Virus record (IMG/VR): IMGVR_UViG_3300017987_000001
Location: 143,858 to 207,857 of that record
DNA: 64,000 bases
Reading direction: 5' to 3' (one strand)
Below the pieces are notes generated by a model, which was not told the origin of the DNA, made no database searches, and saw nothing but the letters and a program-made list of their open reading frames with translations. Shown here in pieces: positions 12,442-61,738 of the stretch. The position numbers and the translations under genes are program-made. Every line of letters begins with the position of its first letter. The stretch's first letter is position 1.

Positions 12442-13128
12442 CTATCTCCTCGCGATCTTGAATGGCTTGCGCTTGCCCTGCAGTACCATGCGCAGGCTCT
12501 GCTTGTAGCCGAGATGGGTGGACATATCGAGTACGCCAAGCCACGGCCTCGGCTTCATCTTCAGGAACTTCTGATCGTAGTACCAGTCGGACATCGACTT
12601 CTGGTCCACGCGCCCGGTGACCTTCGGGATGCCGAACTTCTCAGCGAAGTCACGTCGAACAACCCAGCACGGGCCGTTCGACGTGTTCTTCAACCGCACC
12701 TCATAGTCTCCGATCTGAACGGTGGAGCGCGTGGGGTGCTTGCGCTCCTGCAGTCGATCGGTATGCATCGCTGCAGCTACCACATCCTCGCGCTCGTCGA
12801 GCACGAGCTTGCCCGCCTTCAGCCACTCGGGCTTGAGAATCATGTCGTCATCAACCCACGACACGTACTTCGCGTCGCTCGCTTCTACCTGCTTCCACAT
12901 CTGGCGCAGCGCGTACGACTTCTGCCACTGCGGAACGTTGCGCTGATTCTTGATGATCTGTTGCACGCGTCCAACAGTCTTCAGCCACTTGTACGTGCCG
13001 TCGATCGAGCCGTTGTCGATGACGAGCAGGTGGGCATCTCCGATGTCGGATGCGAGCAGCGACTCCACGCACTGCTTCAGGAAGTCGAGTCGATCACGCG
13101 TGATCACCGTGATGATTGTGTCGGGCAT
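12442..13128 (-). CDS. glycosyltransferase family 2
   Basis: LKQCVESLL, VIDNGSIDGT, WVDDDM. Confidence 0.85.
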   Translation of the reverse strand: MPDTIITVITRDRLDFLKQCVESLLASDIGDAHLLVIDNGSIDGTYKWLKTVGRVQQIIKNQRNVPQWQKSYALRQMWKQVEASDAKYVSWVDDDMILKPEWLKAGKLVLDEREDVVAAAMHTDRLQERKHPTRSTVQIGDYEVRLKNTSNGPCWVVRRDFAEKFGIPKVTGRVDQKSMSDWYYDQKFLKMKPRPWLGVLDMSTHLGYKQSLRMVLQGKRKPFKIARR

Positions 13129-14009
13129 CAGAGTCGATCCTTTTTGTAAACGCTGTAGAGCAGCTTAACGATGGTCCCCGTGATCTGTGCAGGCGGGAGC
13201 ACCACGCCCTTCTTGTGCAGGATCACTTCCACGGGCGTAGCGAACGGATTCCAGTCCTTCTCGTACCGAACTTTGTTGCCGCCGCCGATCAGGCTCTGGA
13301 AGCGGCTCGTCGCCCACACGACGTGAGGCACGCGGCAGAGCGACGCCAGATGCATCGGACCGCTCGACGGGCCGATCACGAGCTGCGAGCTGGCAATGAG
13401 GTTCACCAACTCGTTCAGTGGCATGCCGCGCTTGTCCGTCACGCCTATGGGCAGGAGTGAAGCGTGCTTGGTACCGATCGCCACAATCTCTTCACGCTTT
13501 GCGATCTTCTTCGTGACGATCTGCTCGATCAGTCGGTCCCACATCTTCTGCGGATAGTTATCCCCGGCGAATGGAGCAGCGCATCGACGATTGCGCGCGT
13601 GAATGACGACCTTCCACGGTGTCGGGATCAGGCCGCCATATGGCACGAATGACTGATCGCGGAGCTTTCGTCGAGGAGGACGGCGTACCCAGCTCTCCAG
13701 CCTAATCACTTCGTATCCGAGCTTCTGGTACTTGTGCTCGTAGGCGCTCAGCTCGCCACGAACGCGCGCGACCTCGGCGGGGTTGTCGACCTTGCCCTTA
13801 CGTGGACGGTGCCCGTCACGATCGCAGAGGATGACATGGGGAATGAAGGTGTGACTGAAGTCACGGTAGAGCGGCCAGAGCCCTTCCGTGCTGCAGATGA
13901 TTACGTTTCGGGGATCAATACCCTGAGCCTGCTTGCGTACGAAGCCCTGCCACTCCATCAACTCCCAGCCGAACTCCGATACGCACGGTCCAGCGATAAG
14001 CGCCTTCAT
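13128..14009 (-). CDS. glycosyltransferase family 9-like (heptosyltransferase fold)
   Basis: VIHAR...NYP..MW; LVIGPSSGPMHLASLCRVP. Confidence 0.7.
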   Translation of the reverse strand: MKALIAGPCVSEFGWELMEWQGFVRKQAQGIDPRNVIICSTEGLWPLYRDFSHTFIPHVILCDRDGHRPRKGKVDNPAEVARVRGELSAYEHKYQKLGYEVIRLESWVRRPPRRKLRDQSFVPYGGLIPTPWKVVIHARNRRCAAPFAGDNYPQKMWDRLIEQIVTKKIAKREEIVAIGTKHASLLPIGVTDKRGMPLNELVNLIASSQLVIGPSSGPMHLASLCRVPHVVWATSRFQSLIGGGNKVRYEKDWNPFATPVEVILHKKGVVLPPAQITGTIVKLLYSVYKKDRL

Positions 14010-14045
14010 TGCCCTGCGGTCCCTCCTCGATTAGGGACGGCGGCG

Positions 14046-16820
14046 TCAGCCAGTCTGTGCGCCGGTCATCTGTTGTAGTGCTTGGAACCCTCCCTCAAGC
14101 TTCGCCTGATCCCTTGTCTCGTCCATCTTCTGGATAACGAGCGCGTGAAGCGTCTGATCGGACTTCTTGAGGTCCGTGAGCTGCGACTTGCGGATCTCGT
14201 ACGGCATACCAAGCATCTGCATCGCAATCTGCTCAGCCTGCGATTGCATATCGTCGGGTGTCGTTCCACCCGCCGGAGAGGGCTGTCCAGCAGGAGCAGC
14301 GCCTGCGGGAGCGCCACCAGCAGGAGCGGGCTGACCGGGCATCTGCGGCTGGTCTGCGGCAGCGAAGATCTGCTCGAACTCCTGCTGCTTCGCCTGATCC
14401 TCCTGAAACTTCTTGCTCTCGTCGGCGAACTGCTTCTCTTCCTCGAACATCCGCCGTATTTCCTCGCGCCAGTCGATTCCATACGGTGCGAAGGCAGTCT
14501 GCTTCGAGATCTGCTGCGAGGCGGCGAGCTGAAGCTGGATCTGCTTCTTCTCGATGTCCTCGGCGAGCGTCGTCGGCTGGAGGCGTCCGCTGATCTTCTC
14601 CCAGTTCATCAGGTCGGTAATCGCCTCGAAGAACCAGTTGACCCACCCGTTCATGGCGGAGACGAAATGCGTCCACGTGCGCTCAAACAGACGCAGCGCC
14701 ATCGGAGCTGCCTGCACCTGCAGCGTGCCACGGTACATCTCAGCCGGAACGCCCATAGCATTGAGGAACTCGTCCATGCCTGCATTGATGAGGTCAACGG
14801 GAGCGAGATCCTGCCCCTCGCCACCAAGAGCGCGGTAGTCGATGGGGAACGGGAGTGCATTCCACTGAGTCGGATCCTTGCGATGCTTGCGAATCATGCC
14901 CATCACGCGGCCCATGAACGAACCAGCATTGACGTGATACAGCGGGTCGACCTCGCCAGTGCCCGAGCCCTTGCCCGGCGTGATGATGCGGAATGGAATG
15001 ATGTAGTCGAGACCGATGGCCTCGTTGTAGCGCTTGAGCACCTGCACGTACCACGCCTGCTTGAAGTTGGCGAGGATGCGCGGAATGCCCCATCCGGCAT
15101 TACGCAAACCGGCGACGCACTCCTCTTTGAAGTGGTAGATGATGCCCTTGTTGAACTGGAACCACTTGTCGGTGCGCAAGCACTCGACTATTTCCCACGG
15201 CGTCGACTCAAGGTAGAACGGGTTGCCCTTGCGGACCTCTCGCTTGATGTCCGAAGGCGGGATCCAATAGTACGCAGTCTCGTGAGAAATTGGGTGGTGC
15301 TGGAGACGGACCTCGTGGGGCGACCATCGAATGATTCGTGGCTTATCCTCTTCCACGGAACGGCGATCGACACGTTCGAATACTCCCGTCCACCCACACT
15401 GTGGACACGTCGCGTTGAACTGCCAGTTCTCAAAGGAGTATTCCATCCGACCGAGCGTGCGTTCGTGGAAACACTTACGACAGCGAAGATATCGGCGGAA
15501 TGGAATGTGTACGGAAGTGAATGAATTACCGTAGCACTGCTTCGTCAGAATGCCGTTATCGATAACGAACGTATGCGTCTCCATCTCGACACAGCAGAAT
15601 ACCTCGTCAACAATACCTGTTCCGCGTACTTCCTTGACTCCGATATACTGACCATAGTTCGTGGGCTTGTAGTTCTCCTCGAACTTGGCTCTATGCGCTG
15701 GGATCAGGAAGTCTTGCGGCAACATCGACTGCTTAAGCAACGTGACGTAATAAATGTCACTGTCGTATACGTCGACGTGTCCGTCATCACGAACAAACTC
15801 CGCCGTACGCCGCTGACTTCGGACAGGACCAGCGGACATACCGATACGAGGAAGCTGTCGAACAATTGCCTCCAACGTAGCGGAGGATGCCTGCGTCAGC
15901 ATCGCACAACCGTGCGTGTCCACAGTACCATCAGCAGACAGGAAGCCGCATACGAAGCCGTACCAATACTCCGCACTCATGTCATTCGACGGGAGCGCCT
16001 TGTAGTGCGGCGGCAGACCAAACATCTCGACTTTTCCAGAGTCCGGCGTGTAGTCGTCTACATCCCAGTACGCCAGCATGACCGCGTCCTTCTCCCCGAA
16101 GAACGTAGCCTTTGCCTGCTTGCCCTTGTTGTACAGTGAGCCGTCACCAAACGTGAAGCCGTGGCGAACGCCTTCCTTGAAGTCATCACCCCGCTCGGGG
16201 CGAGGAGCTACGACTCTGGGGATCCTGTATCCCTTCCGCAGTTCAGCTGTAGAAACTTCAACCTCTTTGTCAGAGCAGTTCTTGGCGATCCACCGATGCT
16301 CGGGCGTAGCCAGCACGGTGCGGCCGTCGCTAAACTCAACTTCGAGAAGTTCTTGATGACCAAAGGACTTGAACTCTGCGGGGCGATACACGCCATCTTT
16401 CGATAGCACGTCAACAGTCTTACCCACAAGCTCGCGAAGCTTGAAGACGCCACCGCGCGTGACCGCTTCAGTGTCGCCGTGGAAACACATGTAATCGTCG
16501 CCAATAGTAGCGAGCACGTCGAGGATCTTGATCTGCTTATTTAGGAAGTCTTCGTACTTCTCCTTCTCGTCATCCGATGCATCCTGCAGTTCGATCTTCG
16601 TCAGGAAGTAGCGAACGACACGCTGCGCAGCCATGCGAAACGTGCCGTTGGTTACCCACAGATACTCACACCAGCGCATGACGTCGTAGAGCGAGCGCGG
16701 CATCTGTGTGGATGCGTAGTCAAAGAACGGGTCGGGGAATGCTTGAGAATACCGGTTCGCCGTACTGTTGGCTGAACCGACACCGGTCGTTGGGAACATC
16801 GGGAAGACAGCTTCGGCCAT
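14046..16820 (-). CDS. probable phage portal protein interrupted by an intein
   Basis: About 607-aa extein; YGNSF next to the intein, GWGIPRILA segment, Gln/Pro/Ala-rich tail. Portal call rests on resemblance only. Confidence 0.55.
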   Translation of the reverse strand: MAEAVFPMFPTTGVGSANSTANRYSQAFPDPFFDYASTQMPRSLYDVMRWCEYLWVTNGTFRMAAQRVVRYFLTKIELQDASDDEKEKYEDFLNKQIKILDVLATIGDDYMCFHGDTEAVTRGGVFKLRELVGKTVDVLSKDGVYRPAEFKSFGHQELLEVEFSDGRTVLATPEHRWIAKNCSDKEVEVSTAELRKGYRIPRVVAPRPERGDDFKEGVRHGFTFGDGSLYNKGKQAKATFFGEKDAVMLAYWDVDDYTPDSGKVEMFGLPPHYKALPSNDMSAEYWYGFVCGFLSADGTVDTHGCAMLTQASSATLEAIVRQLPRIGMSAGPVRSQRRTAEFVRDDGHVDVYDSDIYYVTLLKQSMLPQDFLIPAHRAKFEENYKPTNYGQYIGVKEVRGTGIVDEVFCCVEMETHTFVIDNGILTKQCYGNSFTSVHIPFRRYLRCRKCFHERTLGRMEYSFENWQFNATCPQCGWTGVFERVDRRSVEEDKPRIIRWSPHEVRLQHHPISHETAYYWIPPSDIKREVRKGNPFYLESTPWEIVECLRTDKWFQFNKGIIYHFKEECVAGLRNAGWGIPRILANFKQAWYVQVLKRYNEAIGLDYIIPFRIITPGKGSGTGEVDPLYHVNAGSFMGRVMGMIRKHRKDPTQWNALPFPIDYRALGGEGQDLAPVDLINAGMDEFLNAMGVPAEMYRGTLQVQAAPMALRLFERTWTHFVSAMNGWVNWFFEAITDLMNWEKISGRLQPTTLAEDIEKKQIQLQLAASQQISKQTAFAPYGIDWREEIRRMFEEEKQFADESKKFQEDQAKQQEFEQIFAAADQPQMPGQPAPAGGAPAGAAPAGQPSPAGGTTPDDMQSQAEQIAMQMLGMPYEIRKSQLTDLKKSDQTLHALVIQKMDETRDQAKLEGGFQALQQMTGAQTG
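15537..16487 (-). mobile_element. intein (317 aa) with LAGLIDADG homing endonuclease, Gln-terminal
   Basis: Starts C112 (CFHGDT); block B ATPEHRW; LAGLIDADG-like GFTFGDGS and GFLSADG; block F VFCCVEMETHTF; ends ILTKQ|C. Confidence 0.92.
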
Positions 16821-16828: not shown

Positions 16829-17038
16829 CTACTTCTGTTCGTGTGCATCTTTCAGGTGAAGCGGTACGGCCTTGAGTGGAACGGTGTCAGCTTCGGATGC
16901 GCGCTTGTCCATCTCCTGCTGCGCCTCACGCGCATGACGCAGGCAGAGCACCTTGTCATCCATGATCGTGTACGAAGGAGCCTGACAGTAGTCGCAGCGC
17001 GTCGAGCCGATCACGACCTTGTTTGCTTTATCCATCAT
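16829..17038 (-). CDS. small Cys-containing hypothetical protein
   Basis: MMDKANK...CDYC...CLRH; lies just upstream of the portal-like gene. Confidence 0.6.
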   Translation of the reverse strand: MMDKANKVVIGSTRCDYCQAPSYTIMDDKVLCLRHAREAQQEMDKRASEADTVPLKAVPLHLKDAHEQK

Positions 17039-17735
17039 CCTGCTCCTCTGCGATGAACAGTACCGTAAATGTAACCGAGTCGTCTGGCATTGTAAACTGA
17101 ATTCCAGCCCACACGCACGTGAGCGTCTTCTTGTTGACCTGTACCTCGACGACCATCGCTTCCTCACCCTCGATCTCGGGCAGCTCGTAGGTGGTTCCGA
17201 GTTCGGCGTTCCGAGACATGAGCACCAGCTGATTGCCATCGCGAAACACCGACGAGTACTGCTGGCGCACACGCCCGAATGTCCCCTTGATAGCGACAGG
17301 TACCGTGGTGCGCTTCGGGATGGTTACGTTCGGAACGTCGAGCGTGGCAGGCGGAATCTCGTGCGTCTCGTCGACCTCCACACGTGTGGGGATATCCGTG
17401 TCGACAGGAGGAACAGCGCGTCCGGCCGGTGCTTGCTTCGGCGCTTTGTTGGACGCGTTCAAAAATGTCTGCTCCACATCGGCCTCGTCCGGGCTGGCCT
17501 TCTTCTCCGAGCCTTTGGCCAGTGCTCCCGGCTCGACTACAGCGATGGTACGCATTTCACCACCTTCGCACACCACGATGTTCTGCTCGATCTGAGGGTT
17601 CTGCGCGTCGAAGCCCATGCTGCCACCGACCTCTCCGCCCTTCCGGTGGGAGGGGATGACGGTCGCATGCAGCGCCTCATCACGTGCGTATTCGGTGCGG
17701 TTCTCCGGCCCAAAGTCGCCTTCTGTGGGGGTCAT
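17028..17735 (-). CDS. hypothetical protein
   Basis: ORF with GGAG before the ATG; downstream of a promoter. Confidence 0.7.
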   Translation of the reverse strand: MTPTEGDFGPENRTEYARDEALHATVIPSHRKGGEVGGSMGFDAQNPQIEQNIVVCEGGEMRTIAVVEPGALAKGSEKKASPDEADVEQTFLNASNKAPKQAPAGRAVPPVDTDIPTRVEVDETHEIPPATLDVPNVTIPKRTTVPVAIKGTFGRVRQQYSSVFRDGNQLVLMSRNAELGTTYELPEIEGEEAMVVEVQVNKKTLTCVWAGIQFTMPDDSVTFTVLFIAEEQDDG

Positions 17736-18253: not shown

Positions 18254-18741
18254 CGCTTCCTCCCATTGAGCTGTCGTTGCATGTTCAGGATCCTACCGGC
18301 CTCGCTAGCCGATCTGGGCACGTGCGTACGTGCTCGCTTGCGTAGTGCCTCCTCCTGTGCCCACTCCTTGGCCCTGTAGATGAGCAGCATGGTCGTAACC
18401 GACGACAGAGCGTACAGGATCGCCAGACTGATCGGAATGAGCCGCGTCAGGGTCGACACTGCAAGGGCTATCAGGGAGGCCAAGCAGATCGGAGCTGTAG
18501 CACGCGCGATATCCTTGACCAGCGGAGGATTGTTCGGGGTGCACAGTCTCACGAGGTTGGCCGTCAGGCGGAAGAGCAGATGAGTGAGCAGGAAAGCGAC
18601 GACCCCCACGTAGAGGGTCGGCGCCTTCCCGGTGCGTACGGAGAGCAGGAGTTCGAGAATGGCTGGGATGGCAAGCAGGCAGGCGTTGACGAACAGGATG
18701 GTCGCCGCGCCCATCAACACGCCGTAGATGTGCCTGCGCAT
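18250..18741 (-). CDS. multi-pass membrane protein
   Basis: About four hydrophobic segments. Confidence 0.7.
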   Translation of the reverse strand: MRRHIYGVLMGAATILFVNACLLAIPAILELLLSVRTGKAPTLYVGVVAFLLTHLLFRLTANLVRLCTPNNPPLVKDIARATAPICLASLIALAVSTLTRLIPISLAILYALSSVTTMLLIYRAKEWAQEEALRKRARTHVPRSASEAGRILNMQRQLNGRKR

Positions 18742-19316
18742 GACGCCCTCCTTGGATCGTGCCCGAGCGCCTTGGCGCGATTGATGAACGACATGTTATT
18801 CAGCACCCGCTTGCGCGCCTCGTAGAACAGCGGCATCTGCGAGCGCGCGGCGAACTCCTCACGCAGGCAGAGGTCCGCGATCGCGGCGTCTGCGCTCTTA
18901 TCACGCACCACCTCGGCGAGTGCTACCTGCAGTTGTCCGTCGTACATGGCGTGGTACTTCTCGGCCAGCTCGTCGCCGCGTCGCGGCTTGTCCGAACGCG
19001 CAATGCGCACGACCTCGCCGGTCTGCAGGTAGTACGTGCCATCGTGGTCGAACACGGCCATGATGACCTCCGTGCTCTGGGCGATGACGATCCCGCCGTG
19101 GTTGCTGGGCAGGTAGGGCGCGCAGTCCGCCACGGATTCGATCATGCCCTTGCCGCCCCGCACCTGTGCGAACGCGCCCCACTTGATCCAGCACGTGTAG
19201 CGCTTGCCGAGGTGGAGGAACGGCACATCCTCCTCGTGGCTCGTGTTGAAGCCCGACACCACCCGTCCGACGAGCGAACCGGACGGCCAGCTCTCGCGTG
19301 CTATGTCTACGAGCAT
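18714..19316 (-). CDS. hypothetical protein
   Basis: ORF in operon context. Confidence 0.65.
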   Translation of the reverse strand: MLVDIARESWPSGSLVGRVVSGFNTSHEEDVPFLHLGKRYTCWIKWGAFAQVRGGKGMIESVADCAPYLPSNHGGIVIAQSTEVIMAVFDHDGTYYLQTGEVVRIARSDKPRRGDELAEKYHAMYDGQLQVALAEVVRDKSADAAIADLCLREEFAARSQMPLFYEARKRVLNNMSFINRAKALGHDPRRASCAGTSTAC

Positions 19317-20321: not shown

Positions 20322-21605
20322 CTAGCCGGTCTTGCGCTTGCGCTTCGACTTCGCGGGCTTCACCTCGACCTTCGCAGCTTGCTTGAGGTACTCATCCAAG
20401 CGCCGCTTGATCGTGTGCATAGACACTTCGAAGTCTTTGGCAATCGCAGCGTACGAACGTCCGGCTTCACGCATCTTCGCCATGCGCTTGAGCTGCTTCT
20501 CGGTGAAGTCGATGCGCTTACGCGTGTGTGCCTTCGGCTTCTCGGCCTTGGACTTCGGCTTCTTGTCAGACATCGACGTCTTCACGTACTTCCCCATTTT
20601 CTGTACGCGCTCCTTGAGTCCGTAGTCCTTCATTGCGTCGAGGAACTTCTCGGACCCAATCGAATACTGGAACGGGGTACCGGCAACGTTGAGCCGCGAG
20701 TTTACGGCCAAAGCCTCACCGGGAATCTCGATCGCCGACTTGCCTTCATAGTACTGCGTCCACGCCCACGCAACTGCATGAGAGAGTGCGCGCGGAGACG
20801 GCCGCGCTCGCTGATTGAGCGCGTTCCGCGTACGATCCTGTACATCGATCAGGAACTCACGAAGCGCCTGTCGTGGATCATTCGCCTTCATGATGCCGTT
20901 GTGCGCAACACCGTGCCAGAAAAGCTTGGCCTTCCTCGGCTGCCACTGCATGGTGATCAGCGCGACCGACAGGATCGATTGCTGATAGACTGTCGGACGC
21001 CGCAGCGCACCCATCCGCCCTTCGAAGACTCCATTGAGGCTGATCATGGAGTCCACGAAATGCTTGGCGAACTGGCAGTACAGTGCAGGGTAATGCGTCT
21101 GCACCCTCGCGATGCTCTGCGAGAATGAATCAGCGATGAACGTCACGGCACTCATCAGCTTACCAACGCCCCGCTTCCCGAGAATCTCGATGATCTTCTT
21201 GCCGTAATAGGCCACGAACATATCGGCCTTCGTACGGCTGCCCATACCGGTGTCGAATGATATGTACAGACGGTCGACCTGTGCCATATCCTTGCACTTG
21301 TACGTGATCATGACGAAGTACATCGGGATTCCTGTTCGTGCGATGGTCGTGAGCCTGTGGTAGCCGTCAACGATGAATGTCTTGGCCCCGACCGCCGCAA
21401 GCGAGAGTACCGATCCCGGTCGGAAGGCACCCTCGTCCAGCATCATCTCCAGCCCGCCGAGTGTGACGTTCCGCATCGGGCGCTGCTTCGGGTACATCAT
21501 CGTCTTGAGCATCTCGCGCGCCTTGACCGGTGTGATCCGCGTCAGCTTCACGCGGATGCTCAGGATAAACCTGAACAATCCAAACAACGAAGACAGAAAA
21601 GCCAT
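20322..21605 (-). CDS. ParB/Srx (DGxHR)-like domain protein with C-terminal HTH
   Basis: FIVDGYHRLTTI; C-terminal GRSYAAIAKDFEVSMHTIKRRL. Confidence 0.65.
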   Translation of the reverse strand: MAFLSSLFGLFRFILSIRVKLTRITPVKAREMLKTMMYPKQRPMRNVTLGGLEMMLDEGAFRPGSVLSLAAVGAKTFIVDGYHRLTTIARTGIPMYFVMITYKCKDMAQVDRLYISFDTGMGSRTKADMFVAYYGKKIIEILGKRGVGKLMSAVTFIADSFSQSIARVQTHYPALYCQFAKHFVDSMISLNGVFEGRMGALRRPTVYQQSILSVALITMQWQPRKAKLFWHGVAHNGIMKANDPRQALREFLIDVQDRTRNALNQRARPSPRALSHAVAWAWTQYYEGKSAIEIPGEALAVNSRLNVAGTPFQYSIGSEKFLDAMKDYGLKERVQKMGKYVKTSMSDKKPKSKAEKPKAHTRKRIDFTEKQLKRMAKMREAGRSYAAIAKDFEVSMHTIKRRLDEYLKQAAKVEVKPAKSKRKRKTG

Positions 21606-21635
21606 TGTGGTATTCCTTTCACCCACGGGCAGTAG

Positions 21636-22263: not shown

Positions 22264-22452
22264 TCACGTCTTGAGCCTCGTGCGCACCTTGTACCCGCTC
22301 GGCAGCTTCAGCTCAGCGAGAGACTTGGCGCGCATAGCATCTGCGAGACCGAGACCTTCGGCGCCGATGAGGTCGACCACCGTGTTCGTCCGGCGGTCGA
22401 TGATCTCGACGATGTAGCGCAACTGGGTCGGGTCTAGCATGGTGACGTCCAC
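22264..22452 (-). CDS. small hypothetical protein
   Basis: Shares V.(I)IDRRT...VV..(I/V)G with 22732-22923, so a likely paralogue. Confidence 0.55.
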   Translation of the reverse strand: MDVTMLDPTQLRYIVEIIDRRTNTVVDLIGAEGLGLADAMRAKSLAELKLPSGYKVRTRLKT

Positions 22453-22703
22453 TTCGACACTTCGCAGATCGCACAGTCGAGGTAGCCCGAGCCATCATAC
22501 AGGTAGTTGAACAGGTAGATCACCTCGCGGACGATGTAGCGCGTACCGTCTGCGCCACGTCCACCAGCGGTGTCGATTACCCACTCGCCCACGCGCGGCG
22601 GCATCGGCAGCTCCATGACGAAGTCTGCGGAATTGGCATCATCGTCCTTCGTGCGATCGTATGCGAACTGCGACTTCGGGATGATGATGAACTCGATACG
22701 CAT
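22434..22703 (-). CDS. hypothetical protein
   Basis: GGAGGG RBS. Confidence 0.6.
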   Translation of the reverse strand: MRIEFIIIPKSQFAYDRTKDDDANSADFVMELPMPPRVGEWVIDTAGGRGADGTRYIVREVIYLFNYLYDGSGYLDCAICEVSKWTSPC

Positions 22704-22731
22704 GCGCCCTCCAATTGTTGGACGCGTCCAA

Positions 22732-22923
22732 CTATGCGACAACGCACTCGCATTCGCAATCCATCGCGAGTTCGACCTTGAACGACCGGCGGCTGCGATC
22801 CTTCTCCAGAATGGACTTCAGCCGCTGCGCTTCCCGGTACAGCATCTTCGGCCCGACGCACTGCACGATCTCCTTCGTGCGTCGATCGATGACGTGAACC
22901 ATCCACTCTTCGTTCTCGGGCAT
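22732..22923 (-). CDS. small hypothetical protein
   Basis: VHVIDRRTKEIVQCVG; paralogue of 22264-22452. Confidence 0.6.
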   Translation of the reverse strand: MPENEEWMVHVIDRRTKEIVQCVGPKMLYREAQRLKSILEKDRSRRSFKVELAMDCECECVVA

Positions 22924-37166: not shown

Positions 37167-37298
37167 GCTTGGCGGAGAGTTCGGGAGGCAGATCACAACT
37201 TCAACCCCCCAGCAAGTGATTTCCGATACAGACAGTGGGGCACTGCTCTGTCCACCAAGCAACAACGGCGACCCAGCCCGGGTCGCCGTTGCTTTTTT
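37167..37298 (+). ncRNA. candidate ~130-nt small RNA
   Basis: Own promoter; 12-bp terminator hairpin (37263-37291) plus T-run; internal stems; no convincing ORF. Confidence 0.5.
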
Positions 37299-38870: not shown

Positions 38871-39349
38871 TTCTGTCTCAGCCCAGCGGCAAATGCGTCG
38901 AACGGCAAAACCGTGAGCCGCGAGCCATCGTGGCCGTTCCGAATGATCGCGTTGACGCCCGGGATGACCGAGACGTCGGCATCGTGGATGATCCAGTTGC
39001 TCTTGGCGACCAGCGGGAAGACCACTCCTACTTTCAGTCCTTCTTCGTGCGTCGCGCGGGCTTCGATGAACGCCTGCGCGATCGGATGCTTCATGAAGGA
39101 TTTCAGCAACAGGTCTCCGATGACCTGCCCCTTCAGTTTGGTAACGGTGACATATACGGGTGGGTTGTACGCGTCGTTGAACCACTCGAACCCGAACTCA
39201 TCACCGGCCTCGTGCGCCAGCTCTCGGGCATCCTCATCATCCAACAGGATGGAGAGGAGCCGGTTGAGCATGCGAATGTCATAACGCTGCTCCGATTGCT
39301 GCCGCTTGTCGGCTTCGAACTGGTCGAAGCCGGGAAAGAGATTGTTCAT
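38858..39349 (-). CDS. hypothetical protein
   Basis: Operon context. Confidence 0.65.
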   Translation of the reverse strand: MNNLFPGFDQFEADKRQQSEQRYDIRMLNRLLSILLDDEDARELAHEAGDEFGFEWFNDAYNPPVYVTVTKLKGQVIGDLLLKSFMKHPIAQAFIEARATHEEGLKVGVVFPLVAKSNWIIHDADVSVIPGVNAIIRNGHDGSRLTVLPFDAFAAGLRQKWQP

Positions 39350-39924
39350 ACCGTTCCCTCATCACACAGCGAGTCGGTGAGCTTCCTGATATAGTTGCGC
39401 ACGCGACGGAGCCACTCGCAGTCACGGAAGTTGACGAAGAACATGAAGACGGGGATGTTGAGCACCTGCGCCAGACCACGCACGTACGTACCATTTGGCG
39501 CTGTGTCGTTGCGCTCCCAGTACGAGATAGTGGTCTGTGCGACTGGGATACCCTTGTCAGTCATGAGCTTCGCGAGGCGCCACTGTGGGACGCTCCGCTC
39601 TTCTCTGAACCTCCGTAGATTCTCTCCGAAGTGGTAGTCGTAGTGCGTGGGTGGTTGGGGGAGCGCGGGCAGATCTAAGATCTGCCCGGGCGGGACAGCT
39701 ATGTACGCTTCATCCGATAGCTCATTGTTCTCGGTATCGAACTTCAGGTCTTCGAAGTGGTGCCAGTAGAGCTTGCGACGCCCATTCCACTGTACGGCGA
39801 CCTTGTTGAAGTTCGACACACGAGTCGTTTGCTTGCGTACCGCGATACCCTTACGATCCTTCTTCGCGACCAACAGCTTACCGTTGGCCGCATACAGATC
39901 CGTACGCGCCCACACAACCCCCAT
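39346..39924 (-). CDS. protein with C-terminal XRE-family HTH
   Basis: FGENLRRFRE...QTTISYWER..TAP...LAQVLNI. Confidence 0.75.
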   Translation of the reverse strand: MGVVWARTDLYAANGKLLVAKKDRKGIAVRKQTTRVSNFNKVAVQWNGRRKLYWHHFEDLKFDTENNELSDEAYIAVPPGQILDLPALPQPPTHYDYHFGENLRRFREERSVPQWRLAKLMTDKGIPVAQTTISYWERNDTAPNGTYVRGLAQVLNIPVFMFFVNFRDCEWLRRVRNYIRKLTDSLCDEGTV

Positions 39925-39970: not shown

Positions 39971-41167
39971 CTACGATTCAAGCGGCTCGTCGTCTTCGCA
40001 CGCAACTTCCGGATCCTGAACCGTGGACTCCGGAATGGGCATAGCACCCACCCATTCCTTGTAGTCGTTGATGCCCAACCGCTTACGGAGTTCGACCATA
40101 AGCTCAGGATTCGACTGAACAGCCAGCCCCACATCCTGCCCGGAAACCGCCTTCAGCCCGAGCTGTCGACAGTTGAACGAGCGCGTGAGCGCCGTCATAT
40201 TCTCCGTAGAGGGTGTCACCTCAATGAGATCCTTTACCGCCGCTTTCTGCTGCGACAGCATTTCGGCGGTAGCGTGATTCCAGTCGAAATGCATTCGTGC
40301 GAGCGGGCCAGAATGATCGTAGACGAACAGCGTGTCGATCGAGCGCTTGTGCTCGCCAAACGAGTTCTTCTCCGATCGGAGCCTGAGCTGCGTCAACGTC
40401 TGCTCGGACCCGCGCTGATCCTTGATGCGGCGGATGCTGAGGTACACGGTCGCGTAGAAGTCCTGCGCGATACCGCTCGGCTTCGACTTCTCGTGGCCGG
40501 TACGCCCATCCATCTTCTGCTTCTCGTGGTTCACGTAGATCATCGCCATCGGCCAGCCTGCAAGCTTGCTGGCATACGTCTTCAGCCACTTCGTCCAGAG
40601 CAGCGCTTCGGACGAGTAGTCGCGCTTCGCCGAGCCGTCCTTCGCGATCTGTTCTCCGCGCTCCTCCGTGGCTGCGCCACTCAGGCTGTCCAAACCTACT
40701 GCGATGAGGAAGTCGCGACTCGGCTTCTCCTTCTTCATCCACTCGATAATCCACGTCAACGACTCCTGCGCTGCATCGACGCTGGTAACGGGACGCATGA
40801 GGATGCGCTTCGCCATCTCGCCGCATGTTGACTTCAGCATCGGTGCGCTGATCTTCTCGCCTTCCGTCTCCACGAGCCAGCCGGATCCCGTGAAGCTGCA
40901 GATGTGCCGCATGAAATCAAGCAGGAGCGCCGACTTGAACGACTCGGGCGGCCCAGCGATGCCATACGACTTCCCGAGGATCAGCTTGTCACTACCGAAC
41001 AGGTACTCCAACGCCAGCGACTGGAGCGGCAAGCCGACGTGCCGCTCGTTGATCAGTTCGCTGGCGTAAACGCCCTCCGCGCCGAACTGATTCTGTGCGC
41101 CATGCAGCAGCCCAAGGTGGGCGTCGGCAGGCATTGCTGCAGTGGCTTTCGCTTTTCGCTTTCCCAT
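39971..41167 (-). CDS. RecA/UvsX-like recombinase
   Basis: GPPESFKS Walker A variant, VETE, VGLDSL, YVNHEK. Confidence 0.8.
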   Translation of the reverse strand: MGKRKAKATAAMPADAHLGLLHGAQNQFGAEGVYASELINERHVGLPLQSLALEYLFGSDKLILGKSYGIAGPPESFKSALLLDFMRHICSFTGSGWLVETEGEKISAPMLKSTCGEMAKRILMRPVTSVDAAQESLTWIIEWMKKEKPSRDFLIAVGLDSLSGAATEERGEQIAKDGSAKRDYSSEALLWTKWLKTYASKLAGWPMAMIYVNHEKQKMDGRTGHEKSKPSGIAQDFYATVYLSIRRIKDQRGSEQTLTQLRLRSEKNSFGEHKRSIDTLFVYDHSGPLARMHFDWNHATAEMLSQQKAAVKDLIEVTPSTENMTALTRSFNCRQLGLKAVSGQDVGLAVQSNPELMVELRKRLGINDYKEWVGAMPIPESTVQDPEVACEDDEPLES

Positions 41168-41254
41168 GATTCCTCCAAGGTGGGCGGCCGTAGGTCATCA
41201 CGTGGTGCCCCGTTTTAAATGCACCGCCCACCCACGATTGTTGAACGCGACCAA

Positions 41255-42649
41255 CTATTGACCAGCGTTACCCGGAGTCTCTCCCTTGTTCTTCGCATCG
41301 TTCAGCATGGTGAGAGCCTGAGCGAGGAGCGCCGGGTCGACCGCACCGCCCGTCACCGCCGGACCGGGAGTGTGCGGAGCCGCATTGGGCGACTGAGGCG
41401 TCTGCTGCGTCTGCGGCTGCTGCCCGGCAGGTGCCGAGAACTCAGACGGAGTCGCAGGAACTTCCGGACCGGACGGGGTCTCTTCGTCGCCTCCGTCACC
41501 GGAACCCCAGCCGTCGTCCGCAGGCGGAGCCTGCTGAGTCTGCGGGGGAGCCTGTTGCGTCTGCTGAGTCTGCGGAGGCGCCTGCTGCGTCTGAGACTGC
41601 TGCAGCTGCTGCTGCGCCGCCCCCTGCAGTCCACCACCGCCACCCGTGGCATACGCCTGCCGCACGCCGCCGCGCATGCTGTTCTGCAGCGCCTGCCAAC
41701 TACCGCACGTGCCCTCGGGGAGCATCCCCTCGTACTCGCTGCGACCGAGTGCGAAGTCGAGCAGCTCGACCGGGAACGCCCGCTTCAGGTAGCCGATCTG
41801 CTGCTCTGCCGTGTGATACCGGAAGAGCTGGGGCCACGGGGTCCAGAAGCTGCGCACGCGATTCTGCATCGCCTCGTTGAGCGGCTTCTCGGCGAGCATC
41901 TCGATGTCGTAGTGCGCAATCTCCGTCTCCGTCTTCTCGGCCTGAAAGATCTTCATGATCCGGCCGTGCTCGGGCGAGCACCAGTCCCCGAGCTTGAAGC
42001 CGCGAGCACACAGCTCGTCGAACGCGCGACGTCCCTCTTCCGTATCCGTCGGCGGAAGCTGCGCAGGGAACTCGAAGCCCTCAACTTGCGCATTGCCCAG
42101 TCGCGAGAACGCCATGAGGATCGAGAGCGAACCCATGAAGAGCACCGGGAATCGCGGCTCTTCCTTGCCCGTGACGCGGTTCTTGCAGGGCTTACCCTTG
42201 ATCGCCGTGGCAGCCGCCTGCGCGAACATGTGCGTCTGGACCTTCGATACCTTCGCACCCCGTCCCGGACCGCTCTGGGTCCAGCCGTACCACTCCTTCG
42301 GGATGTCGTGCGGACTGTGCTCTGCCACCGTCAGCAGGGCATTGGTCAGCTTGGTCGTCGGATCCTCACCATCCAGCTCGGGGATCCGCGTGATGTACGT
42401 GAACGACTCGAATGCACCGAGCTTCTTCGCGACAGGCTCGGTCTCAACAGCCGGGCCGAAGTGGTCAAACTCGATGCTGTTACGCATCGGTTCCCAGCCA
42501 CCCTCTCGCGGAGCAGGGAAGATGCGGATCTCCGTGAATGTCTTCCAGTCGGGCAGCTGAGTCGAATGCGGCGTACCGGGCTGCTTGATCATGAACCCCG
42601 GAACGCCATCGAGTCCGCCACCGCCACCAGCACGATCTCTGAACGCCAT
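41255..42649 (-). CDS. putative ssDNA-binding / recombination mediator protein
   Basis: Lies between recA-like and pol genes; Gln/Pro/acidic low-complexity tail. Function inferred from context. Confidence 0.4.
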   Translation of the reverse strand: MAFRDRAGGGGGLDGVPGFMIKQPGTPHSTQLPDWKTFTEIRIFPAPREGGWEPMRNSIEFDHFGPAVETEPVAKKLGAFESFTYITRIPELDGEDPTTKLTNALLTVAEHSPHDIPKEWYGWTQSGPGRGAKVSKVQTHMFAQAAATAIKGKPCKNRVTGKEEPRFPVLFMGSLSILMAFSRLGNAQVEGFEFPAQLPPTDTEEGRRAFDELCARGFKLGDWCSPEHGRIMKIFQAEKTETEIAHYDIEMLAEKPLNEAMQNRVRSFWTPWPQLFRYHTAEQQIGYLKRAFPVELLDFALGRSEYEGMLPEGTCGSWQALQNSMRGGVRQAYATGGGGGLQGAAQQQLQQSQTQQAPPQTQQTQQAPPQTQQAPPADDGWGSGDGGDEETPSGPEVPATPSEFSAPAGQQPQTQQTPQSPNAAPHTPGPAVTGGAVDPALLAQALTMLNDAKNKGETPGNAGQ

Positions 42650-51545: not shown

Positions 51546-51623
51546 TGGTACCAAGGACAGGATTCGAACCTGCACTGAGTGGCTCTTGAAACCACCGCCT
51601 CTGCCAGATTGGGCTACCTTGGC
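51546..51623 (-). tRNA. tRNA-Leu(CAA), short variable loop
   Basis: GTGGT-TTCAAGA-GCCAC; CCA. Confidence 0.88.
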
Positions 51624-51660
51624 ACATAGTTGCACGCGTCCAACTATCCCACCTGCTCAT

Positions 51661-57674: not shown

Positions 57675-58798
57675 TTCGCCACGTCTATCGCCTTTGGATC
57701 ACCGATGGCCTTCTTCGGGTCGTCCGAAAGCTTGACCACCGGGACGTTGTCGATCTCGACCAGCTTGATGACGATGTTGGCTGATATGGTGCCGGGCACG
57801 TCGTTCGTCAGATTCGTACCGATCCCGAATGCGACCTTGGTCTGCTGAGCGAACTCGCGCTGAAGGCTGATGCACTTCGGCACGTCCAGCGAGTCGCTGA
57901 AGATGATGGTCTTCGACATCGGATCGACGCGTAGCCACTTGTAGTGATTGATCATCCGCCGCGCGAACTCCTTCGAGTTACCGGAATCCTGACGGACACC
58001 GTCGAACAGCCGAGCAAGCTTGCCGTCGAAGTCCTGCAGGAATGCGCTGGTGCCGAACGTGTCGGGGAGCGCGATGCCGAGATCGCCCTCATAGACGTCG
58101 TTCCATGCCTCCAATGCGAACTTGTTGGCGTGTCGCAAACCTACCAGCGCGGAAATCGCTTGGATCCACTCGTGCGCCATCGTACCGATGGGCTTGACCC
58201 CGTGCTTCATGGCGAAGTGTACGTTGCTCGTTCCGATGAAGTTCGGGAACTTCTTCAGCGCTCCTACGACCATGTCCTGCATGTGGTACGAGTAGCGCCG
58301 CCGCGTTCCGAACTCGGCGAACCGGCAGTCTTCGGCAAGCAGCATGCCCGCCTTCTTCAGCGCCTGCTCCTTCTGCTCGTCCCAGTTGGGGCGAGGCTGC
58401 TGCTGCGCCATGATTTGCTCGGTGACGATCGCGAGCAGTGGCACCTCCCAGTAGATAGTTTCGGCCCACAGGCCACTGATCTCGATCTCCGTACCAGCGT
58501 CGGTCGGGGTGATCTTCACGAGGTGCGGATTCGGCTGAAAGTGCTCCAGCCAGTCGATGTACCAGCCTTCCAAGAAGGGGCACTTCTCACGGAGGAACAG
58601 CGACTCCTTGTCGGTCAGCTTCGCGCGGCTGTAGCCCCACATGTGAGAGCTGACGTACTTCGCCATCACCTTCGTGACGGGCTGATGAGCATTTCGGTTG
58701 ACGAACCTGTACGTAGCCTGCGCCTTGGGGAACTTCTTGAGGACAGCTTGCCCCATCGTAAGCTTGTACAGGTCGGTATCAAGGATCGAAGGTTCCAC
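57656..58798 (-). CDS. pncB: nicotinate phosphoribosyltransferase
   Basis: LDTDLYKLTM, EFGTRRR, GTSN, GTMAHEW, VRQDSG, FSDSL, FGIGT, KLSD. Confidence 0.93.
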   Translation of the reverse strand: MEPSILDTDLYKLTMGQAVLKKFPKAQATYRFVNRNAHQPVTKVMAKYVSSHMWGYSRAKLTDKESLFLREKCPFLEGWYIDWLEHFQPNPHLVKITPTDAGTEIEISGLWAETIYWEVPLLAIVTEQIMAQQQPRPNWDEQKEQALKKAGMLLAEDCRFAEFGTRRRYSYHMQDMVVGALKKFPNFIGTSNVHFAMKHGVKPIGTMAHEWIQAISALVGLRHANKFALEAWNDVYEGDLGIALPDTFGTSAFLQDFDGKLARLFDGVRQDSGNSKEFARRMINHYKWLRVDPMSKTIIFSDSLDVPKCISLQREFAQQTKVAFGIGTNLTNDVPGTISANIVIKLVEIDNVPVVKLSDDPKKAIGDPKAIDVAKWTFGI

Positions 58799-59421
58799 TA
58801 CAGCTGCAGCCGTGCGGTGTGCTCGATGAGCACGCCCGCCTTGGCCATCTCCTCGATCGCTTCGACCGTCGTCTTCGGATCCACGCCCTTGCACGCGTCC
58901 AACAGGACGCTTGCGACGTAGCCCCTCTTGACGGCGTCGAGCGCGGTCGCCTTGACGCAGTAGTCCGTGGCAAGGCCGCAGATGATGAGGTTGTCATGCG
59001 GAGGCGTACCGGCGTGCGCCAACGTCTGCAGCATGGCCGTCGGATTCCTGCCCGCGTCCTCGAAGCCGGAATAGCTGTCGAACTGCGGGTTGGTACCCTT
59101 CTCGACGATGAGCTTGCCCTCAACGACCAGCAGCTGACTGTGCAGCTCGTTGCCGGGAGTCTCGACCACGCAGTGATCGGGCCAGAACATCTGTGGCTGC
59201 CCGTTCAGCACGCCCATCGTGAATGGCTCCGTGCCCTGCATCGACGCGAAGCTCTTGTGCATCGGCGGGTGCATGTCCTTCGTGTAGATGATGGGCAATC
59301 GCGAGAAGGCGAACTTGTTGATGACCCGATTGACGACCGGGAGTATGTGGACGGCATCCGGTACGGCAAGGCTGCCGCCGATGAAGTCGTTCTGCATGTC
59401 GACGACTATGAGCGTCGGCAT
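58798..59421 (-). CDS. pncA: nicotinamidase
   Basis: VDMQNDF..GSLAV, DMHP, WPDHCV, YSGF, GLATDYCV. Confidence 0.95.
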   Translation of the reverse strand: MPTLIVVDMQNDFIGGSLAVPDAVHILPVVNRVINKFAFSRLPIIYTKDMHPPMHKSFASMQGTEPFTMGVLNGQPQMFWPDHCVVETPGNELHSQLLVVEGKLIVEKGTNPQFDSYSGFEDAGRNPTAMLQTLAHAGTPPHDNLIICGLATDYCVKATALDAVKRGYVASVLLDACKGVDPKTTVEAIEEMAKAGVLIEHTARLQL

Positions 59422-61626: not shown

Positions 61627-61628
61627 AC

Positions 61629-61704
61629 TGGGGCGAGCGGCGGGAATTGAACCCGCATCCCCACGGTCACAACGTGGTGTCTTTGCCACTGGACCACGCC
61701 CGCC
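61629..61704 (-). tRNA. tRNA-His(GUG)
   Basis: CCACG-TTGTGAC-CGTGG; G-1:C73; CCA. Confidence 0.92.
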
Positions 61705-61738
61705 ATCAGAAAGTTGAACGCGTGCAACAATGTGAGAA

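What the first reader, a model, noticed from the sequence alone, without database searches (positions are those of the whole stretch)
12961..61727. Dispersed palindromic site TTGNACGCGTNCAA, parS-like in distribution
Seen: 7 exact copies (12961, 17449, 22718, 37297, 51630, 58889, 61714) and TTGAACGCGACCAA at 41241. About 0.004 copies are expected by chance in 64 kb for 12 fixed bases at equal frequencies. Flanks often extend the symmetry (ATTGTTG...CAAC(A/T)AT). Five copies are intergenic or at gene boundaries (including upstream of the recA-like gene and near the divergent promoters) and three lie inside CDSs. That pattern suits a genome-organising site as much as an operator. Inference: candidate binder is the ParB-like HTH protein at 20322-21605, or one of the XRE proteins.
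Basis: partly seen in the sequence, partly recalled or inferred. Interest (0 to 1): 0.72.

Follow-up and report, generated by a model that had tools for sequence, protein, structure and literature searches.

The report
Dispersed 22-bp palindrome in jumbo phage
An uncultured 208-kb phage that carries its own RNA polymerase holds 17 near-identical copies of a 22-bp palindrome, spread evenly over the genome and mostly at gene junctions; it is most likely the docking site of a phage DNA-binding protein dimer, not a classical ParB/parS system, and its function is still untested.

Summary
All 7 exact copies are present where about 0.004 are expected. The whole 207,857-bp virus genome has 16 exact copies against 0.01-0.02 expected. 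The "one-mismatch" copy at 41241 reads as an exact copy in the contigs of three public runs.

The true unit is a 22-bp palindrome, ATTGTTGRACG|CGTYCAACAAT. A weight-matrix scan is sharply bimodal: 17 sites score 31-39 bits and the background scores 11 or less.

Sites are enriched in non-coding DNA (8 of 16, P = 1e-5), yet 5 lie deep inside genes in two different reading frames. Spacing is more even than random (P = 0.004). The RNA hairpin is weak (0 to -7 kcal/mol), so sequence is conserved, not structure.

Relatives keep a CGCG-centred palindrome at the same spot upstream of uvsX, with lineage-specific arms. Two relatives show a second copy of their own variant.

The phage encodes a beta/beta' RNA polymerase and a sigma-like factor. 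It has no integrase, no ParA and no Pfam ParB_N match.

ORF 20322-21626 does have a ParB/Srx-like fold, but its HTH-like tail is not conserved in its family. The best binder candidate is a fast-evolving XRE protein at 34904-35341.

My best reading is a dispersed operator or roadblock network. Function and binder remain unproven.

The parts
12957..12978 (.). Palindrome copy inside a glycosyltransferase-like CDS (12442-13128, minus strand). It is read as ..VGRVQQ..
   Evidence: (31.0 bits). GC3 coding signal runs through the site.
17445..17466 (.). Palindrome copy inside a CDS (17028-17735, minus strand), read in another frame (..FLNASN..)
   Evidence: (33.8 bits)
22714..22735 (.). Intergenic copy. 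The TAG stop of the upstream ORF is part of its 5' flank. The SD GGAGGG and the ATG of ORF 22434-22703 follow within 10 nt.
   Evidence: 37.7 bits
37293..37314 (.). Intergenic copy, 4 nt after a stop codon and directly before a GC-rich hairpin
   Evidence: 36.4 bits; next 50 nt fold at -30.6 kcal/mol
37263..37291 (.). GC-rich hairpin abutting the copy at 37293. The hairpin is conserved in relatives L060 and L064, which lack the palindrome here.
41237..41258 (.). Copy between the SSB-like ORF (41255-42667) and uvsX. The window has A at 41250, but three runs read T, which makes it an exact copy. This position is kept in 10 of 12 relatives, each with lineage-specific arms.
41178..41233 (-). Leader hairpin (GTGGG...CCCAC) between the palindrome and the uvsX SD. 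It is present in all 12 relatives.
   Evidence: -26.4 kcal/mol
51626..51647 (.). Copy whose 22-bp unit ends 2 nt before the 5' end of tRNA-Leu(CAA) (51546-51623, minus strand)
   Evidence: (35.1 bits)
58885..58906 (.). Weak copy: the 14-mer is exact but the flanks are not conserved. It lies inside a CDS (58798-59421).
   Evidence: (17.6 bits)
61710..61731 (.). Copy between tRNA-Asp (61739-61817) and tRNA-His (61629-61703)
   Evidence: 31.0 bits
34904..35341 (-). XRE-2, a weak HTH_3 protein of 145 aa counted from MATKDK. It is fast-evolving and is the best, still unproven, binder candidate.
20322..21626 (-). ORF434: a ParB/Srx-like N-terminal domain (DGYHR) plus a lineage-specific C-terminal HTH_7-like tail.
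39346..39924 (-). XRE-1, an HTH_3 protein encoded just after uvsX. Its recognition helix is invariant across relatives.
39971..41167 (-). UvsX/RecA-like recombinase, the gene downstream of the positionally conserved copy

Best explanation
The 22-bp palindrome ATTGTTGRACG|CGTYCAACAAT is the recognition site of a phage-encoded homodimeric DNA-binding protein. The most likely binder is the fast-evolving XRE-type protein at 34904-35341.

The 17 copies form a genome-wide operator network on a genome that is transcribed almost entirely in one direction by the phage's own beta/beta'/sigma RNA polymerase. Bound dimers at cistron and operon junctions would gate transcription passing or starting there, as roadblocks or insulators in the manner of stoperators or KorB.

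**Shown**
- The sites exist, with strict sequence conservation and symmetry.
- They are placed at gene junctions.
- Relatives carry lineage-specific variants.
- The phage RNAP and the HTH genes are present.

**Inferred**
- That a protein binds the sites.
- Which protein it is.
- That the effect is on transcription.
For: **1. Sequence is conserved, not structure.**
- 12 positions are invariant and the flanks are conserved.
- The half-site is TTGRACG on both arms. The 'N' positions are purine/pyrimidine-symmetric but not complementary in 7 of 17 copies.
- The RNA hairpin of the 22-mer is only 0 to -7.2 kcal/mol, and weaker than -1 in four copies.
- Copies inside genes use two different reading frames, LDAFxN and VGRVQQ. 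Selection therefore acts on the DNA, not on a peptide.

**2. Placement at gene junctions.**
- 8 of 16 strong copies lie in the 7.8% of the genome that is non-coding, P = 1e-5.
- In five copies the stop codon of the upstream gene lies in or within 4 nt of the 5' flank.
- An SD sequence, a hairpin or a tRNA begins right after the 3' flank.

**3. No flanking promoter signal.**
- No position outside the 22 bp carries more than about 0.45 bits. The site is self-contained.

**4. Relatives keep the habit but change the arms.**
- Upstream of uvsX, 10 of 12 relatives have a CGCG-centred palindrome at the same place with different arms, for example TTAACCGCGGTTAA, TACGCACGCGTTCGTA, CTACGGCGCGGCGTAG and TTCCCGCGCGCGGGAA.
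- L075 and L078 each carry a second copy of their own variant.
- This is the pattern expected when a binding protein and its site change together.

**5. Few candidate binders, all close to a site.**
- The only recognisable non-sigma HTH genes in the genome are XRE-1, XRE-2 and ORF434.
- Each lies 1.1-1.9 kb downstream of a copy.
- XRE-2's recognition helix differs in every lineage, whereas XRE-1's is invariant.
- L078's second palindrome lies inside its XRE-2-like gene.

**6. The phage has its own transcription machinery.**
- It encodes a multisubunit RNAP and a sigma-like factor.
Against: - No binding was tested. The one complex prediction was not folded.
- No RNA data exist for this phage; none was listed.
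- Five copies lie deep inside genes, where a transcriptional role is not obvious.
- The even spacing (P = 0.004) fits an architectural role at least as well.
- Two relatives (L067, L073) lack the uvsX palindrome but keep uvsX, its leader hairpin and XRE-1. The site is therefore dispensable there.
- A more distant relative showed no comparable repeat over 41 kb.
- XRE-2 matches HTH_3 only weakly, at 19.9-21.1 bits against a cut-off of 23. Its homologues in relatives are marginal hits, E 0.002-0.003 before profile building.
- The centre (CGCG) is the part conserved across lineages, while the arms vary. For classical HTH operators the reverse is usual.
Confidence: 0.42

Rival explanations
1. The 22-mer is itself the promoter, or the core of a promoter class, for the phage's own sigma-RNAP holoenzyme. 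Transcription would start at or just after its 3' flank.
For: - The phage encodes a beta-beta'N fusion, a beta'C subunit and a sigma-like factor.
- In jumbo phages with their own RNAPs, the one conserved motif found by sequence analysis is typically the early promoter (PMC7598289).
- A distant cultured relative, phage Arash, packages beta, beta' and sigma in its virions (PMC10585845).
- This palindrome is the top repeated word in intergenic DNA.
- An SD, a 5' hairpin or a tRNA begins right after the motif.
- At G46264 the order is terminator, then 150 nt, then the motif, then 230 nt, then the gene.
- In L061 the same spot carries TGATATAAT.
- Lineage-specific variation resembles the promoter/RNAP specificity seen among T7, T3 and SP6 (from my own knowledge).
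Against: - The element is a near-perfect palindrome, with no asymmetry that would set direction apart from a G/A preference at one position (Fisher P = 0.015).
- Nearly all genes are on one strand, so a symmetric promoter would also fire antisense.
- At 37297 the order is stop, motif, hairpin.
- L073 and L067 express the same uvsX arrangement without the element.
- At 22718 and G16558 a start about 7 nt after a -10-like AACAAT would remove the SD.
Confidence: 0.18
2. A genome-organising site, like parS, KorB OB, N15 sopC, Noc or SlmA sites. ORF434 (ParB/Srx fold plus an HTH-like tail) or another protein would bind it to compact, segregate, replicate or package the 208-kb chromosome.
For: - Copies occur over the whole genome.
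- Spacing is more even than random: CV 0.51, P = 0.004.
- Copies are kept inside coding sequence in two frames.
- It is a 14-22-bp palindrome, as in ParB-family sites.
- ORF434 has a ParB/Srx-like fold and lies 1.1 kb downstream of a copy.
Against: - No Pfam ParB_N match.
- ORF434 has DGYHR where a ParB CTP-binding motif would be expected.
- No ParA, no integrase, no HU or type II topoisomerase.
- ORF434's HTH tail is absent from its homologues, while relatives still have CGCG palindromes.
- The strong bias to gene junctions and the positional conservation upstream of uvsX point to gene expression.
Confidence: 0.17
3. An RNA-level element: a hairpin in the polycistronic transcripts that serves as a processing, stability or translational-control site for a phage or host RNA-binding protein or nuclease.
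For: - All copies lie on the transcribed strand, between or within cistrons.
- Many sit directly after stop codons and before an SD, a tRNA or a hairpin.
- Across relatives the arms change but stay self-complementary, and the central CGCG (a possible loop) is constant.
- G-T combinations, which would be G.U pairs in sense RNA, are the commonest state at the variable pair.
Against: - The hairpin is weak, 0 to -7.2 kcal/mol.
- 7 of 17 copies cannot pair at the variable position.
- There is no covariation within the genome. Mismatches in relatives are not wobble-compatible.
- No Rfam family matches.
Confidence: 0.08
4. A binding site for a host protein, or a recombination or mobile-cassette boundary in the manner of PeSLs in T4-like phages or REP elements, with no dedicated phage binder.
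For: - The outer TTG-N8-CAA resembles FNR/FixK-type boxes (from my own knowledge, untested).
- The motif-plus-hairpin pairs recall the composite PeSL motifs (PMC4122927).
- The copy at 37297 is absent from the same intergenic spot in relatives, so copies are gained and lost.
Against: - Arms differ between related phages while the core stays the same. A host factor does not explain this easily.
- No transposase or RAYT-type gene was seen.
- Copies inside conserved coding sequence are not cassette borders.
- Viral contigs with the motif each hold a single copy and show almost no protein similarity to this phage.
- The host is unknown, so the host genome could not be scanned.
Confidence: 0.07

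Closest known systems
17-bp dyad repeat TGTTCGGNNNCCGAACA of Cluster O mycobacteriophages (Corndog and relatives; PMC4351075)
   Same: - Invariant inverted-repeat arms.
- Tens of copies spread through the genome: 14 between ORFs, 10 near gene 5' ends and 10 inside ORFs.
- No meaningful orientation.
- Function and binder unknown.
   Different: - Unrelated sequence.
- The Cluster O repeat has a variable 3-bp centre. Here the centre (CGCG) is the most conserved part across lineages.
- Those are 70-kb siphoviruses that use host SigA promoters. This is a 208-kb phage with its own RNAP.
- Density here is lower: 1 copy per 12 kb against about 1 per 2 kb.
Stoperators of Cluster A mycobacteriophages (L5, Bxb1; PMC9283540, PMC6550527)
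   Same: - Many repressor sites across the genome, mostly in short intergenic gaps near stop and start codons.
- They block elongating RNAP.
- Site and repressor specificities co-evolve between lineages.
   Different: - Stoperators are 13-14 bp, asymmetric, orientation-dependent and bound by a monomeric immunity repressor of a temperate phage.
- Here the site is a 22-bp palindrome.
- No integrase or other sign of lysogeny was found.
ParB-family sites that act both as centromere and operator: KorB OB sites of plasmid RK2, the dispersed sopC sites of phage N15, and ParB parS or Noc NBS (from my own knowledge)
   Same: - 13-16-bp palindromes.
- Several copies dispersed over a replicon, some at promoters and some inside genes.
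- A ParB/Srx-fold protein is encoded in the window.
   Different: - No ParB_N Pfam match, no CTP-binding motif and no ParA.
- There is no plasmid-prophage lifestyle evidence.
- The candidate's HTH tail is not conserved in its family.
Phage-specific promoter motifs of phages that encode an RNAP (T7-type promoters; early promoter motifs of phiKZ and AR9; PMC7598289)
   Same: - A phage-encoded RNAP.
- One conserved motif dominating intergenic DNA, with about 17 copies.
- Lineage-specific sequence.
- Some copies lie inside upstream genes.
   Different: - Known examples are asymmetric and mostly AT-rich, centred near -10.
- This element is a GC-cored palindrome with no directional information.
Dyad-symmetric regulator sites of phage gene classes: P1 C1 operators and Lpa boxes, P2 Ogr and Mu C/Mor sites (from my own knowledge)
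   Same: A conserved dyad element recurs at many dispersed operons of one phage and is read by one phage-encoded factor.
   Different: - Those sites sit at a fixed distance from a recognisable -10 element.
- Here nothing outside the 22 bp is conserved.
- No Ogr-, Mor- or C1-like protein was identified.

Membership tests
ParABS partition system / parS | ParB with an N-terminal CTP-binding ParB_N domain (GERRxR-type motif) | tested here: not met
   PF02195 finds nothing in six frames of the genome at E up to 1. ORF434 has DGYHR at that position. Its fold resembles ParB/Srx only weakly: Foldseek E at least 0.008, TM at most 0.39.
ParABS partition system / parS | A partner ParA-type ATPase | tested here: not met
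   PF13614 (AAA_31) gives no match at E up to 1, while the control genomes all give matches. Only this one ParA model was tried.
ParABS partition system / parS | Palindromic sites of about 16 bp clustered near the par operon or origin | tested here: inconclusive
   The site is palindromic (met). The 17 copies are spread over all 208 kb at about 12-kb intervals, not clustered. Dispersed centromere sites are known for N15 (from my own knowledge).
ParABS partition system / parS | ParB binds the site and spreads or slides with CTP | not testable with these tools
   The complex-prediction job with DNA was not folded. EMSA or ChIP is needed.
Stoperators (Cluster A mycobacteriophages) | Asymmetric 13-14-bp site, orientation tied to the direction of transcription | tested here: not met
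   The site is a 22-bp palindrome. The only asymmetry is a G versus A preference at one position, P = 0.015.
Stoperators (Cluster A mycobacteriophages) | Temperate phage with an immunity repressor and an integration system | tested here: not met
   No tyrosine integrase was found: PF00589, no candidates. Serine integrases were not searched.
Stoperators (Cluster A mycobacteriophages) | Sites mostly in short intergenic gaps near stop and start codons | tested here: met
   8 of 16 copies are intergenic against 7.8% non-coding DNA, P = 1e-5. Five copies are within 0-4 nt of a stop codon.
Promoter of a phage-encoded RNAP | The phage encodes its own RNAP and specificity factor | tested here: met
   A 1832-aa protein with Rpb2_3, Rpb2_6, Rpb1_1 and Rpb1_2 domains; a 620-aa protein with Rpb1_4 and Rpb1_5; a 260-aa protein with sigma70 regions 3 and 4 (weak).
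Promoter of a phage-encoded RNAP | A directional (asymmetric) motif at a fixed distance upstream of transcript 5' ends | tested here: inconclusive
   The motif is symmetric. 5' ends could not be examined, as no RNA run was listed.
Structured RNA repeat (REP-like, terminator, nut or processing hairpin) | A stable hairpin whose pairing is kept by covariation | tested here: not met
   The minimum free energy is 0 to -7.2 kcal/mol. 7 of 17 copies are unpaired at the variable position. There is no covariation within the genome and no Rfam match.
Dispersed dyad repeats of phage genomes (Cluster O type; a descriptive class) | An invariant inverted repeat in many copies, both between and within genes, with no orientation | tested here: met
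   compared with PMC4351075. This is membership by description only. There is no homology, and no function is known for either.

The most novel reading that the evidence does not exclude
A whole clade of uncultured phages of about 200 kb that carry their own RNA polymerase uses a lineage-specific, CGCG-centred palindrome as a private address code. A fast-evolving XRE-type dimer reads it at regularly spaced points along a one-directional chromosome. This would partition the genome into transcriptional or topological domains for the phage's own polymerase. It would be a viral insulator and organiser network that co-evolves like an immunity system, but in a lytic phage.
Probability: 0.15. Interest if true: 0.75.

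Novelty: new member of a known kind. Interest (0 to 1): 0.5.

Why it matters
Genome-wide palindromic repeats in phages have been described, for example in Cluster O mycobacteriophages, but they remain almost entirely without a mechanism.

Here the repeat sits in a large, uncultured clade that brings its own beta/beta'/sigma transcription machinery. More than 1,000 RNAP homologues were found, many on contigs of about 200 kb.

The repeat shows a clear grammar: a constant CGCG core, lineage-specific arms and AT-rich flanks. Only three candidate binders were recognised.

This makes a concrete question testable: how does a phage that transcribes 200 kb in one direction with its own polymerase punctuate or organise its chromosome?

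If the XRE-2/arm co-variation holds, it would also supply a set of orthogonal protein-operator pairs.

If the repeat turns out to be an ordinary operator or promoter class, it is still useful as an annotation landmark for this clade.

Tried and rejected
**Searches for relatives**
1. Close relatives in INPHARED and IMG/VR, by DNA and by DNA polymerase: none.
2. The motif pattern in viral contigs gave 56 single hits on contigs with almost no protein similarity to this phage. This is consistent with chance.
3. RNAP-based search of genome contigs returned only an archaeal fragment.
4. The genome search by locus handle on L068/L069: those records are not held.
5. 41 kb of a 210-kb relative with 64% RNAP identity showed no dominant palindrome; CGACGCGTCG occurs only twice.

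**Promoter readings**
6. Sigma-70, sigma-54, ECF and LexA-box readings were rejected by inspection of spacing. The information profile shows no conserved -10 or -35 at fixed distance.
7. No T7-type RNAP was found, though that search's controls were uninformative.

**Other families searched in the genome**
8. RHH_1, HTH_17, AbrB/MazE, HU, type II topoisomerase, integrase, DUF6551 and ParA: all absent.

**Genes next to the sites**
9. Small genes next to the sites have no DNA-binding domains.

**Experimental-type evidence**
10. No RNA-seq run was listed.
11. Complex prediction of the ORF434 dimer with the site was not folded. It is no evidence either way.

**False leads**
12. In phage Arash, the repeated TCTTCGAAGA is a coding (LFEE) word, not an analogue.
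13. Sense-strand terminator-like hairpins show no consistent relation to the copies.
14. Pfam finds nothing in ORF434's homologues.
15. A profile search of solved structures with ORF434's family found nothing.
Full report
**What the window is.** The window is the last 64 kb of G000, an IMG/VR virus record of 207,857 bp. It has 59.7% G+C and a 123-bp terminal overlap. A simple codon-usage gene caller finds 247 genes covering 92% of the genome, 238 of them on the minus strand. The right end carries at least 31 tRNA genes that encode their CCA ends. No close relative exists in INPHARED or IMG/VR. The same genome occurs in four sediment and seawater DNA runs.

**The observation.**
Shuffles give none.
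- Genome-wide there are 16 exact copies against 0.01-0.02 expected under Markov orders 0-4.
- The eighth, "mismatched" copy at 41241 is an exact copy in the main contigs of three public runs. The single difference between those contigs and the window over 5.9 kb is 41250 A>T, the mismatch itself.
- The conserved unit is 22 bp. On the gene-sense strand it reads ATWG-TTGGACGCGTNCAA-MAAT.
- The half-site is TTGRACG on both arms. The two "N" positions are purine/pyrimidine-symmetric but often not complementary.
- A weight-matrix scan is bimodal: 17 sites score 31-39 bits, the copy at 58889 scores 17.6 because its flanks are lost, and everything else scores 11 or less.
- The core hexamer ACGCGT is not enriched by itself (70 against about 67 expected).
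- It is the most repeated word in intergenic DNA. No second strong motif emerges.

**Where the copies sit.**
- Eight of the 16 strong, exactly matching copies are fully intergenic, although only 7.8% of the genome is non-coding (P = 1e-5).
- One more overlaps a gene end, and two lie within 20 nt of a predicted start.
- In five copies the stop codon of the upstream gene is inside or within 4 nt of the 5' flank (TAG in ATAG, or TGA in TGATTG).
- Directly after the 3' flank come an SD plus ATG (22718, G16558), a strong hairpin (37297, 41241 and three others; 4 of 17 fall at or below the 2nd percentile of folding energy, P = 3e-4), or a tRNA 5' end (51630, 61714).
- Five copies are deep inside genes. 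The GC3 coding signal runs through them. They are read in two different frames, LDAFxN and VGRVQQ, so the DNA sequence is what is kept, not a peptide.
- Spacing around the genome is more even than random: CV 0.51 against 0.92 for random placement, P = 0.004.

**DNA site or RNA structure.**
- The 22-mer folds weakly as RNA, at 0 to -7.2 kcal/mol, and four copies are weaker than -1.
- Seven of 17 copies cannot pair at the variable position, and there is no covariation within the genome.
- No Rfam family matches.
- No position outside the 22 bp is conserved (at most about 0.45 bits). There is therefore no fixed-distance -10 or -35 partner.
- Sigma-70-like sites are no more frequent than in shuffles.
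- This is what a self-contained, sequence-specific site for a symmetric protein dimer looks like.

**Relatives.**
- UvsX homologues at 41-72% identity lie on syntenic metagenomic contigs.
- Between the SSB-like gene and uvsX, 10 of 12 lineages carry a palindrome at the same place. It is always centred on CGCG (mostly ACGCGT), with T-rich and A-rich outer flanks, and is followed by a GTGGG... hairpin, an SD and the ATG.
- The arms are lineage-specific: TTAACCGCGGTTAA, TACGCACGCGTTCGTA, ACGACGCGTCGT, CTACGGCGCGGCGTAG, TTCCCGCGCGCGGGAA and others.
- Two lineages lack it but keep the hairpin.
- L075 and L078 each have a second copy of their own variant, both inside genes. The dispersed habit is therefore not unique to this genome.
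- The copy at 37297 has no counterpart in relatives that keep the adjacent hairpin, so copies are gained and lost.
- A more distant relative (64% RNAP identity) showed no dominant palindrome over 41 kb.

**The phage's transcription machinery.**
- G135427-140925 encodes a 1832-aa fusion of beta with the N-terminal part of beta' (Rpb2_6 at 197 bits, Rpb1_2 at 90 bits).
- G127628-129490 encodes the rest of beta'.
- G69920-70702 encodes a sigma-like protein with regions 3 and 4.
- More than 1,000 homologues exist, many on contigs of 175-211 kb.
- The nearest cultured phages, at 30% identity, are Vibrio phage D181 and Salmonella phage Arash. Arash packages beta, beta' and sigma in its virions (PMC10585845).
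- No integrase, ParA, RHH, HU, type II topoisomerase, HTH_17 or AbrB family member was found.

**Candidate binders.** Apart from sigma, only three HTH-type genes were recognised. All are in the window, and each lies 1.1-1.9 kb downstream of a copy.
- ORF434 (20322-21626):
  - It has no Pfam ParB_N match.
  - It does carry DGYHR. Its ESM Atlas look-alikes are DGQHR, DUF6551 and ParB_N proteins.
  - A confident model (pLDDT 87) has ParB, Noc, KorB, PadC or sulfiredoxin as all its top PDB matches, though weak ones.
  - Its family of about 300-aa proteins lacks the C-terminal HTH_7-like tail.
- XRE-1 (39346-39924): it is conserved next to uvsX in all relatives, but its recognition helix (VAQTTISYWER) does not change while the arms do.
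- XRE-2 (34904-35341):
  - It is a weak HTH_3 match.
  - Marginal but syntenic homologues exist in L067, L078, L064 and L061.
  - The recognition helix differs in every lineage.
  - L078's second palindrome lies inside that gene.
  - L067 has three TA-N-CGCG-N-TA copies about 1 kb upstream of its homologue.
  - XRE-2 is therefore my preferred candidate, on circumstantial evidence only.

**Interpretation.**
- I favour a dispersed operator or roadblock network read by a phage dimer (confidence 0.42).
- A promoter class for the phage RNAP (0.18) fits the presence of the polymerase and the way SDs, hairpins and tRNAs begin right after the motif. It does not fit the symmetry, the stop-motif-hairpin order at 37297, or the relatives that do without the element.
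- A ParB-like organiser (0.17) fits the even spacing and the copies inside genes, but fails the ParB and ParA tests.
- RNA-level and host-factor or cassette readings are less likely.
- The operator and organiser readings are not exclusive. KorB, for example, does both.

**Limits.**
- No binding or transcript data could be obtained.
- Gene calls are my own and approximate.
- The host is unknown.
- Whole genomes of relatives could not be scanned.

Noticed in passing
G000 135427-140925, 127628-129490 and 69920-70702 (outside the window): The phage encodes a cellular-type multisubunit RNAP. One gene is a 1832-aa fusion of beta with the N-terminal part of beta', and a second encodes a 620-aa beta' C-terminal part. 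There is also a 260-aa sigma-like factor. It belongs to a large uncultured clade with many contigs of about 200 kb.
   Followed up: partly
window 41250: The window reads A here. The main contigs of three public runs, at 11-12x depth, read T. It is the only difference over 5.9 kb and it restores a perfect palindrome. This is an assembly error or a minor variant in the deposited record.
   Followed up: yes
window 37205-37219 (minus strand) and G000 about 2290-2305: A second repeated element, TCACTTGYTGGGGGGTT, occurs twice in the genome. It is conserved at the same intergenic spot in relatives L060 and L064, downstream of the hairpin. It may be a promoter or an RNA element.
   Followed up: partly
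window 18754-18792 and 35067-35105: A 39-nt repeat, 97% identical, encodes the shared helix SFINxAKALGHDP. It links XRE-2 to an otherwise divergent 200-aa protein (18714-19316), which suggests recent gene conversion or a domain copy.
   Followed up: partly
window 29279-29353 (minus strand): A lone tRNA with anticodon CTA, which reads the amber codon. ARAGORN calls it tRNA-Pyl, and Rfam scores it as tRNA at 63 bits. It lies 22 kb from the main tRNA array and may be a suppressor tRNA.
   Followed up: no
window 41178-41233 (minus strand), and the same place in loci L060-L078: A GC-rich hairpin beginning GTGGG lies between the palindrome and the uvsX SD. It is present in all 12 relatives, including the two that lack the palindrome. 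It could be a leader or attenuator structure, or a second operator.
   Followed up: partly
window 43269-46349 (minus strand) and 14046-16820 (minus strand): The family A DNA polymerase has an N-terminal UDG-like domain. Separately, a 924-aa ORF gives a weak intein-splicing match. Relatives carry inteins in their RNAP genes (LAGLIDADG and Hint domains).
   Followed up: no
window 41386-41612: A 9-nt periodic, low-complexity repeat (GCTGCGTCTGC-like) lies inside the 470-aa ORF between the DNA polymerase gene and uvsX. From its position and acidic tail in relatives, this ORF looks like an SSB.
   Followed up: no
L067 11203-11660: This relative lacks the uvsX palindrome. It has three copies of GTACCGCGMTAT (pattern TA-N-CGCG-N-TA) within 450 bp of coding DNA, about 1 kb upstream of its XRE-2-like gene.
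   Followed up: partly
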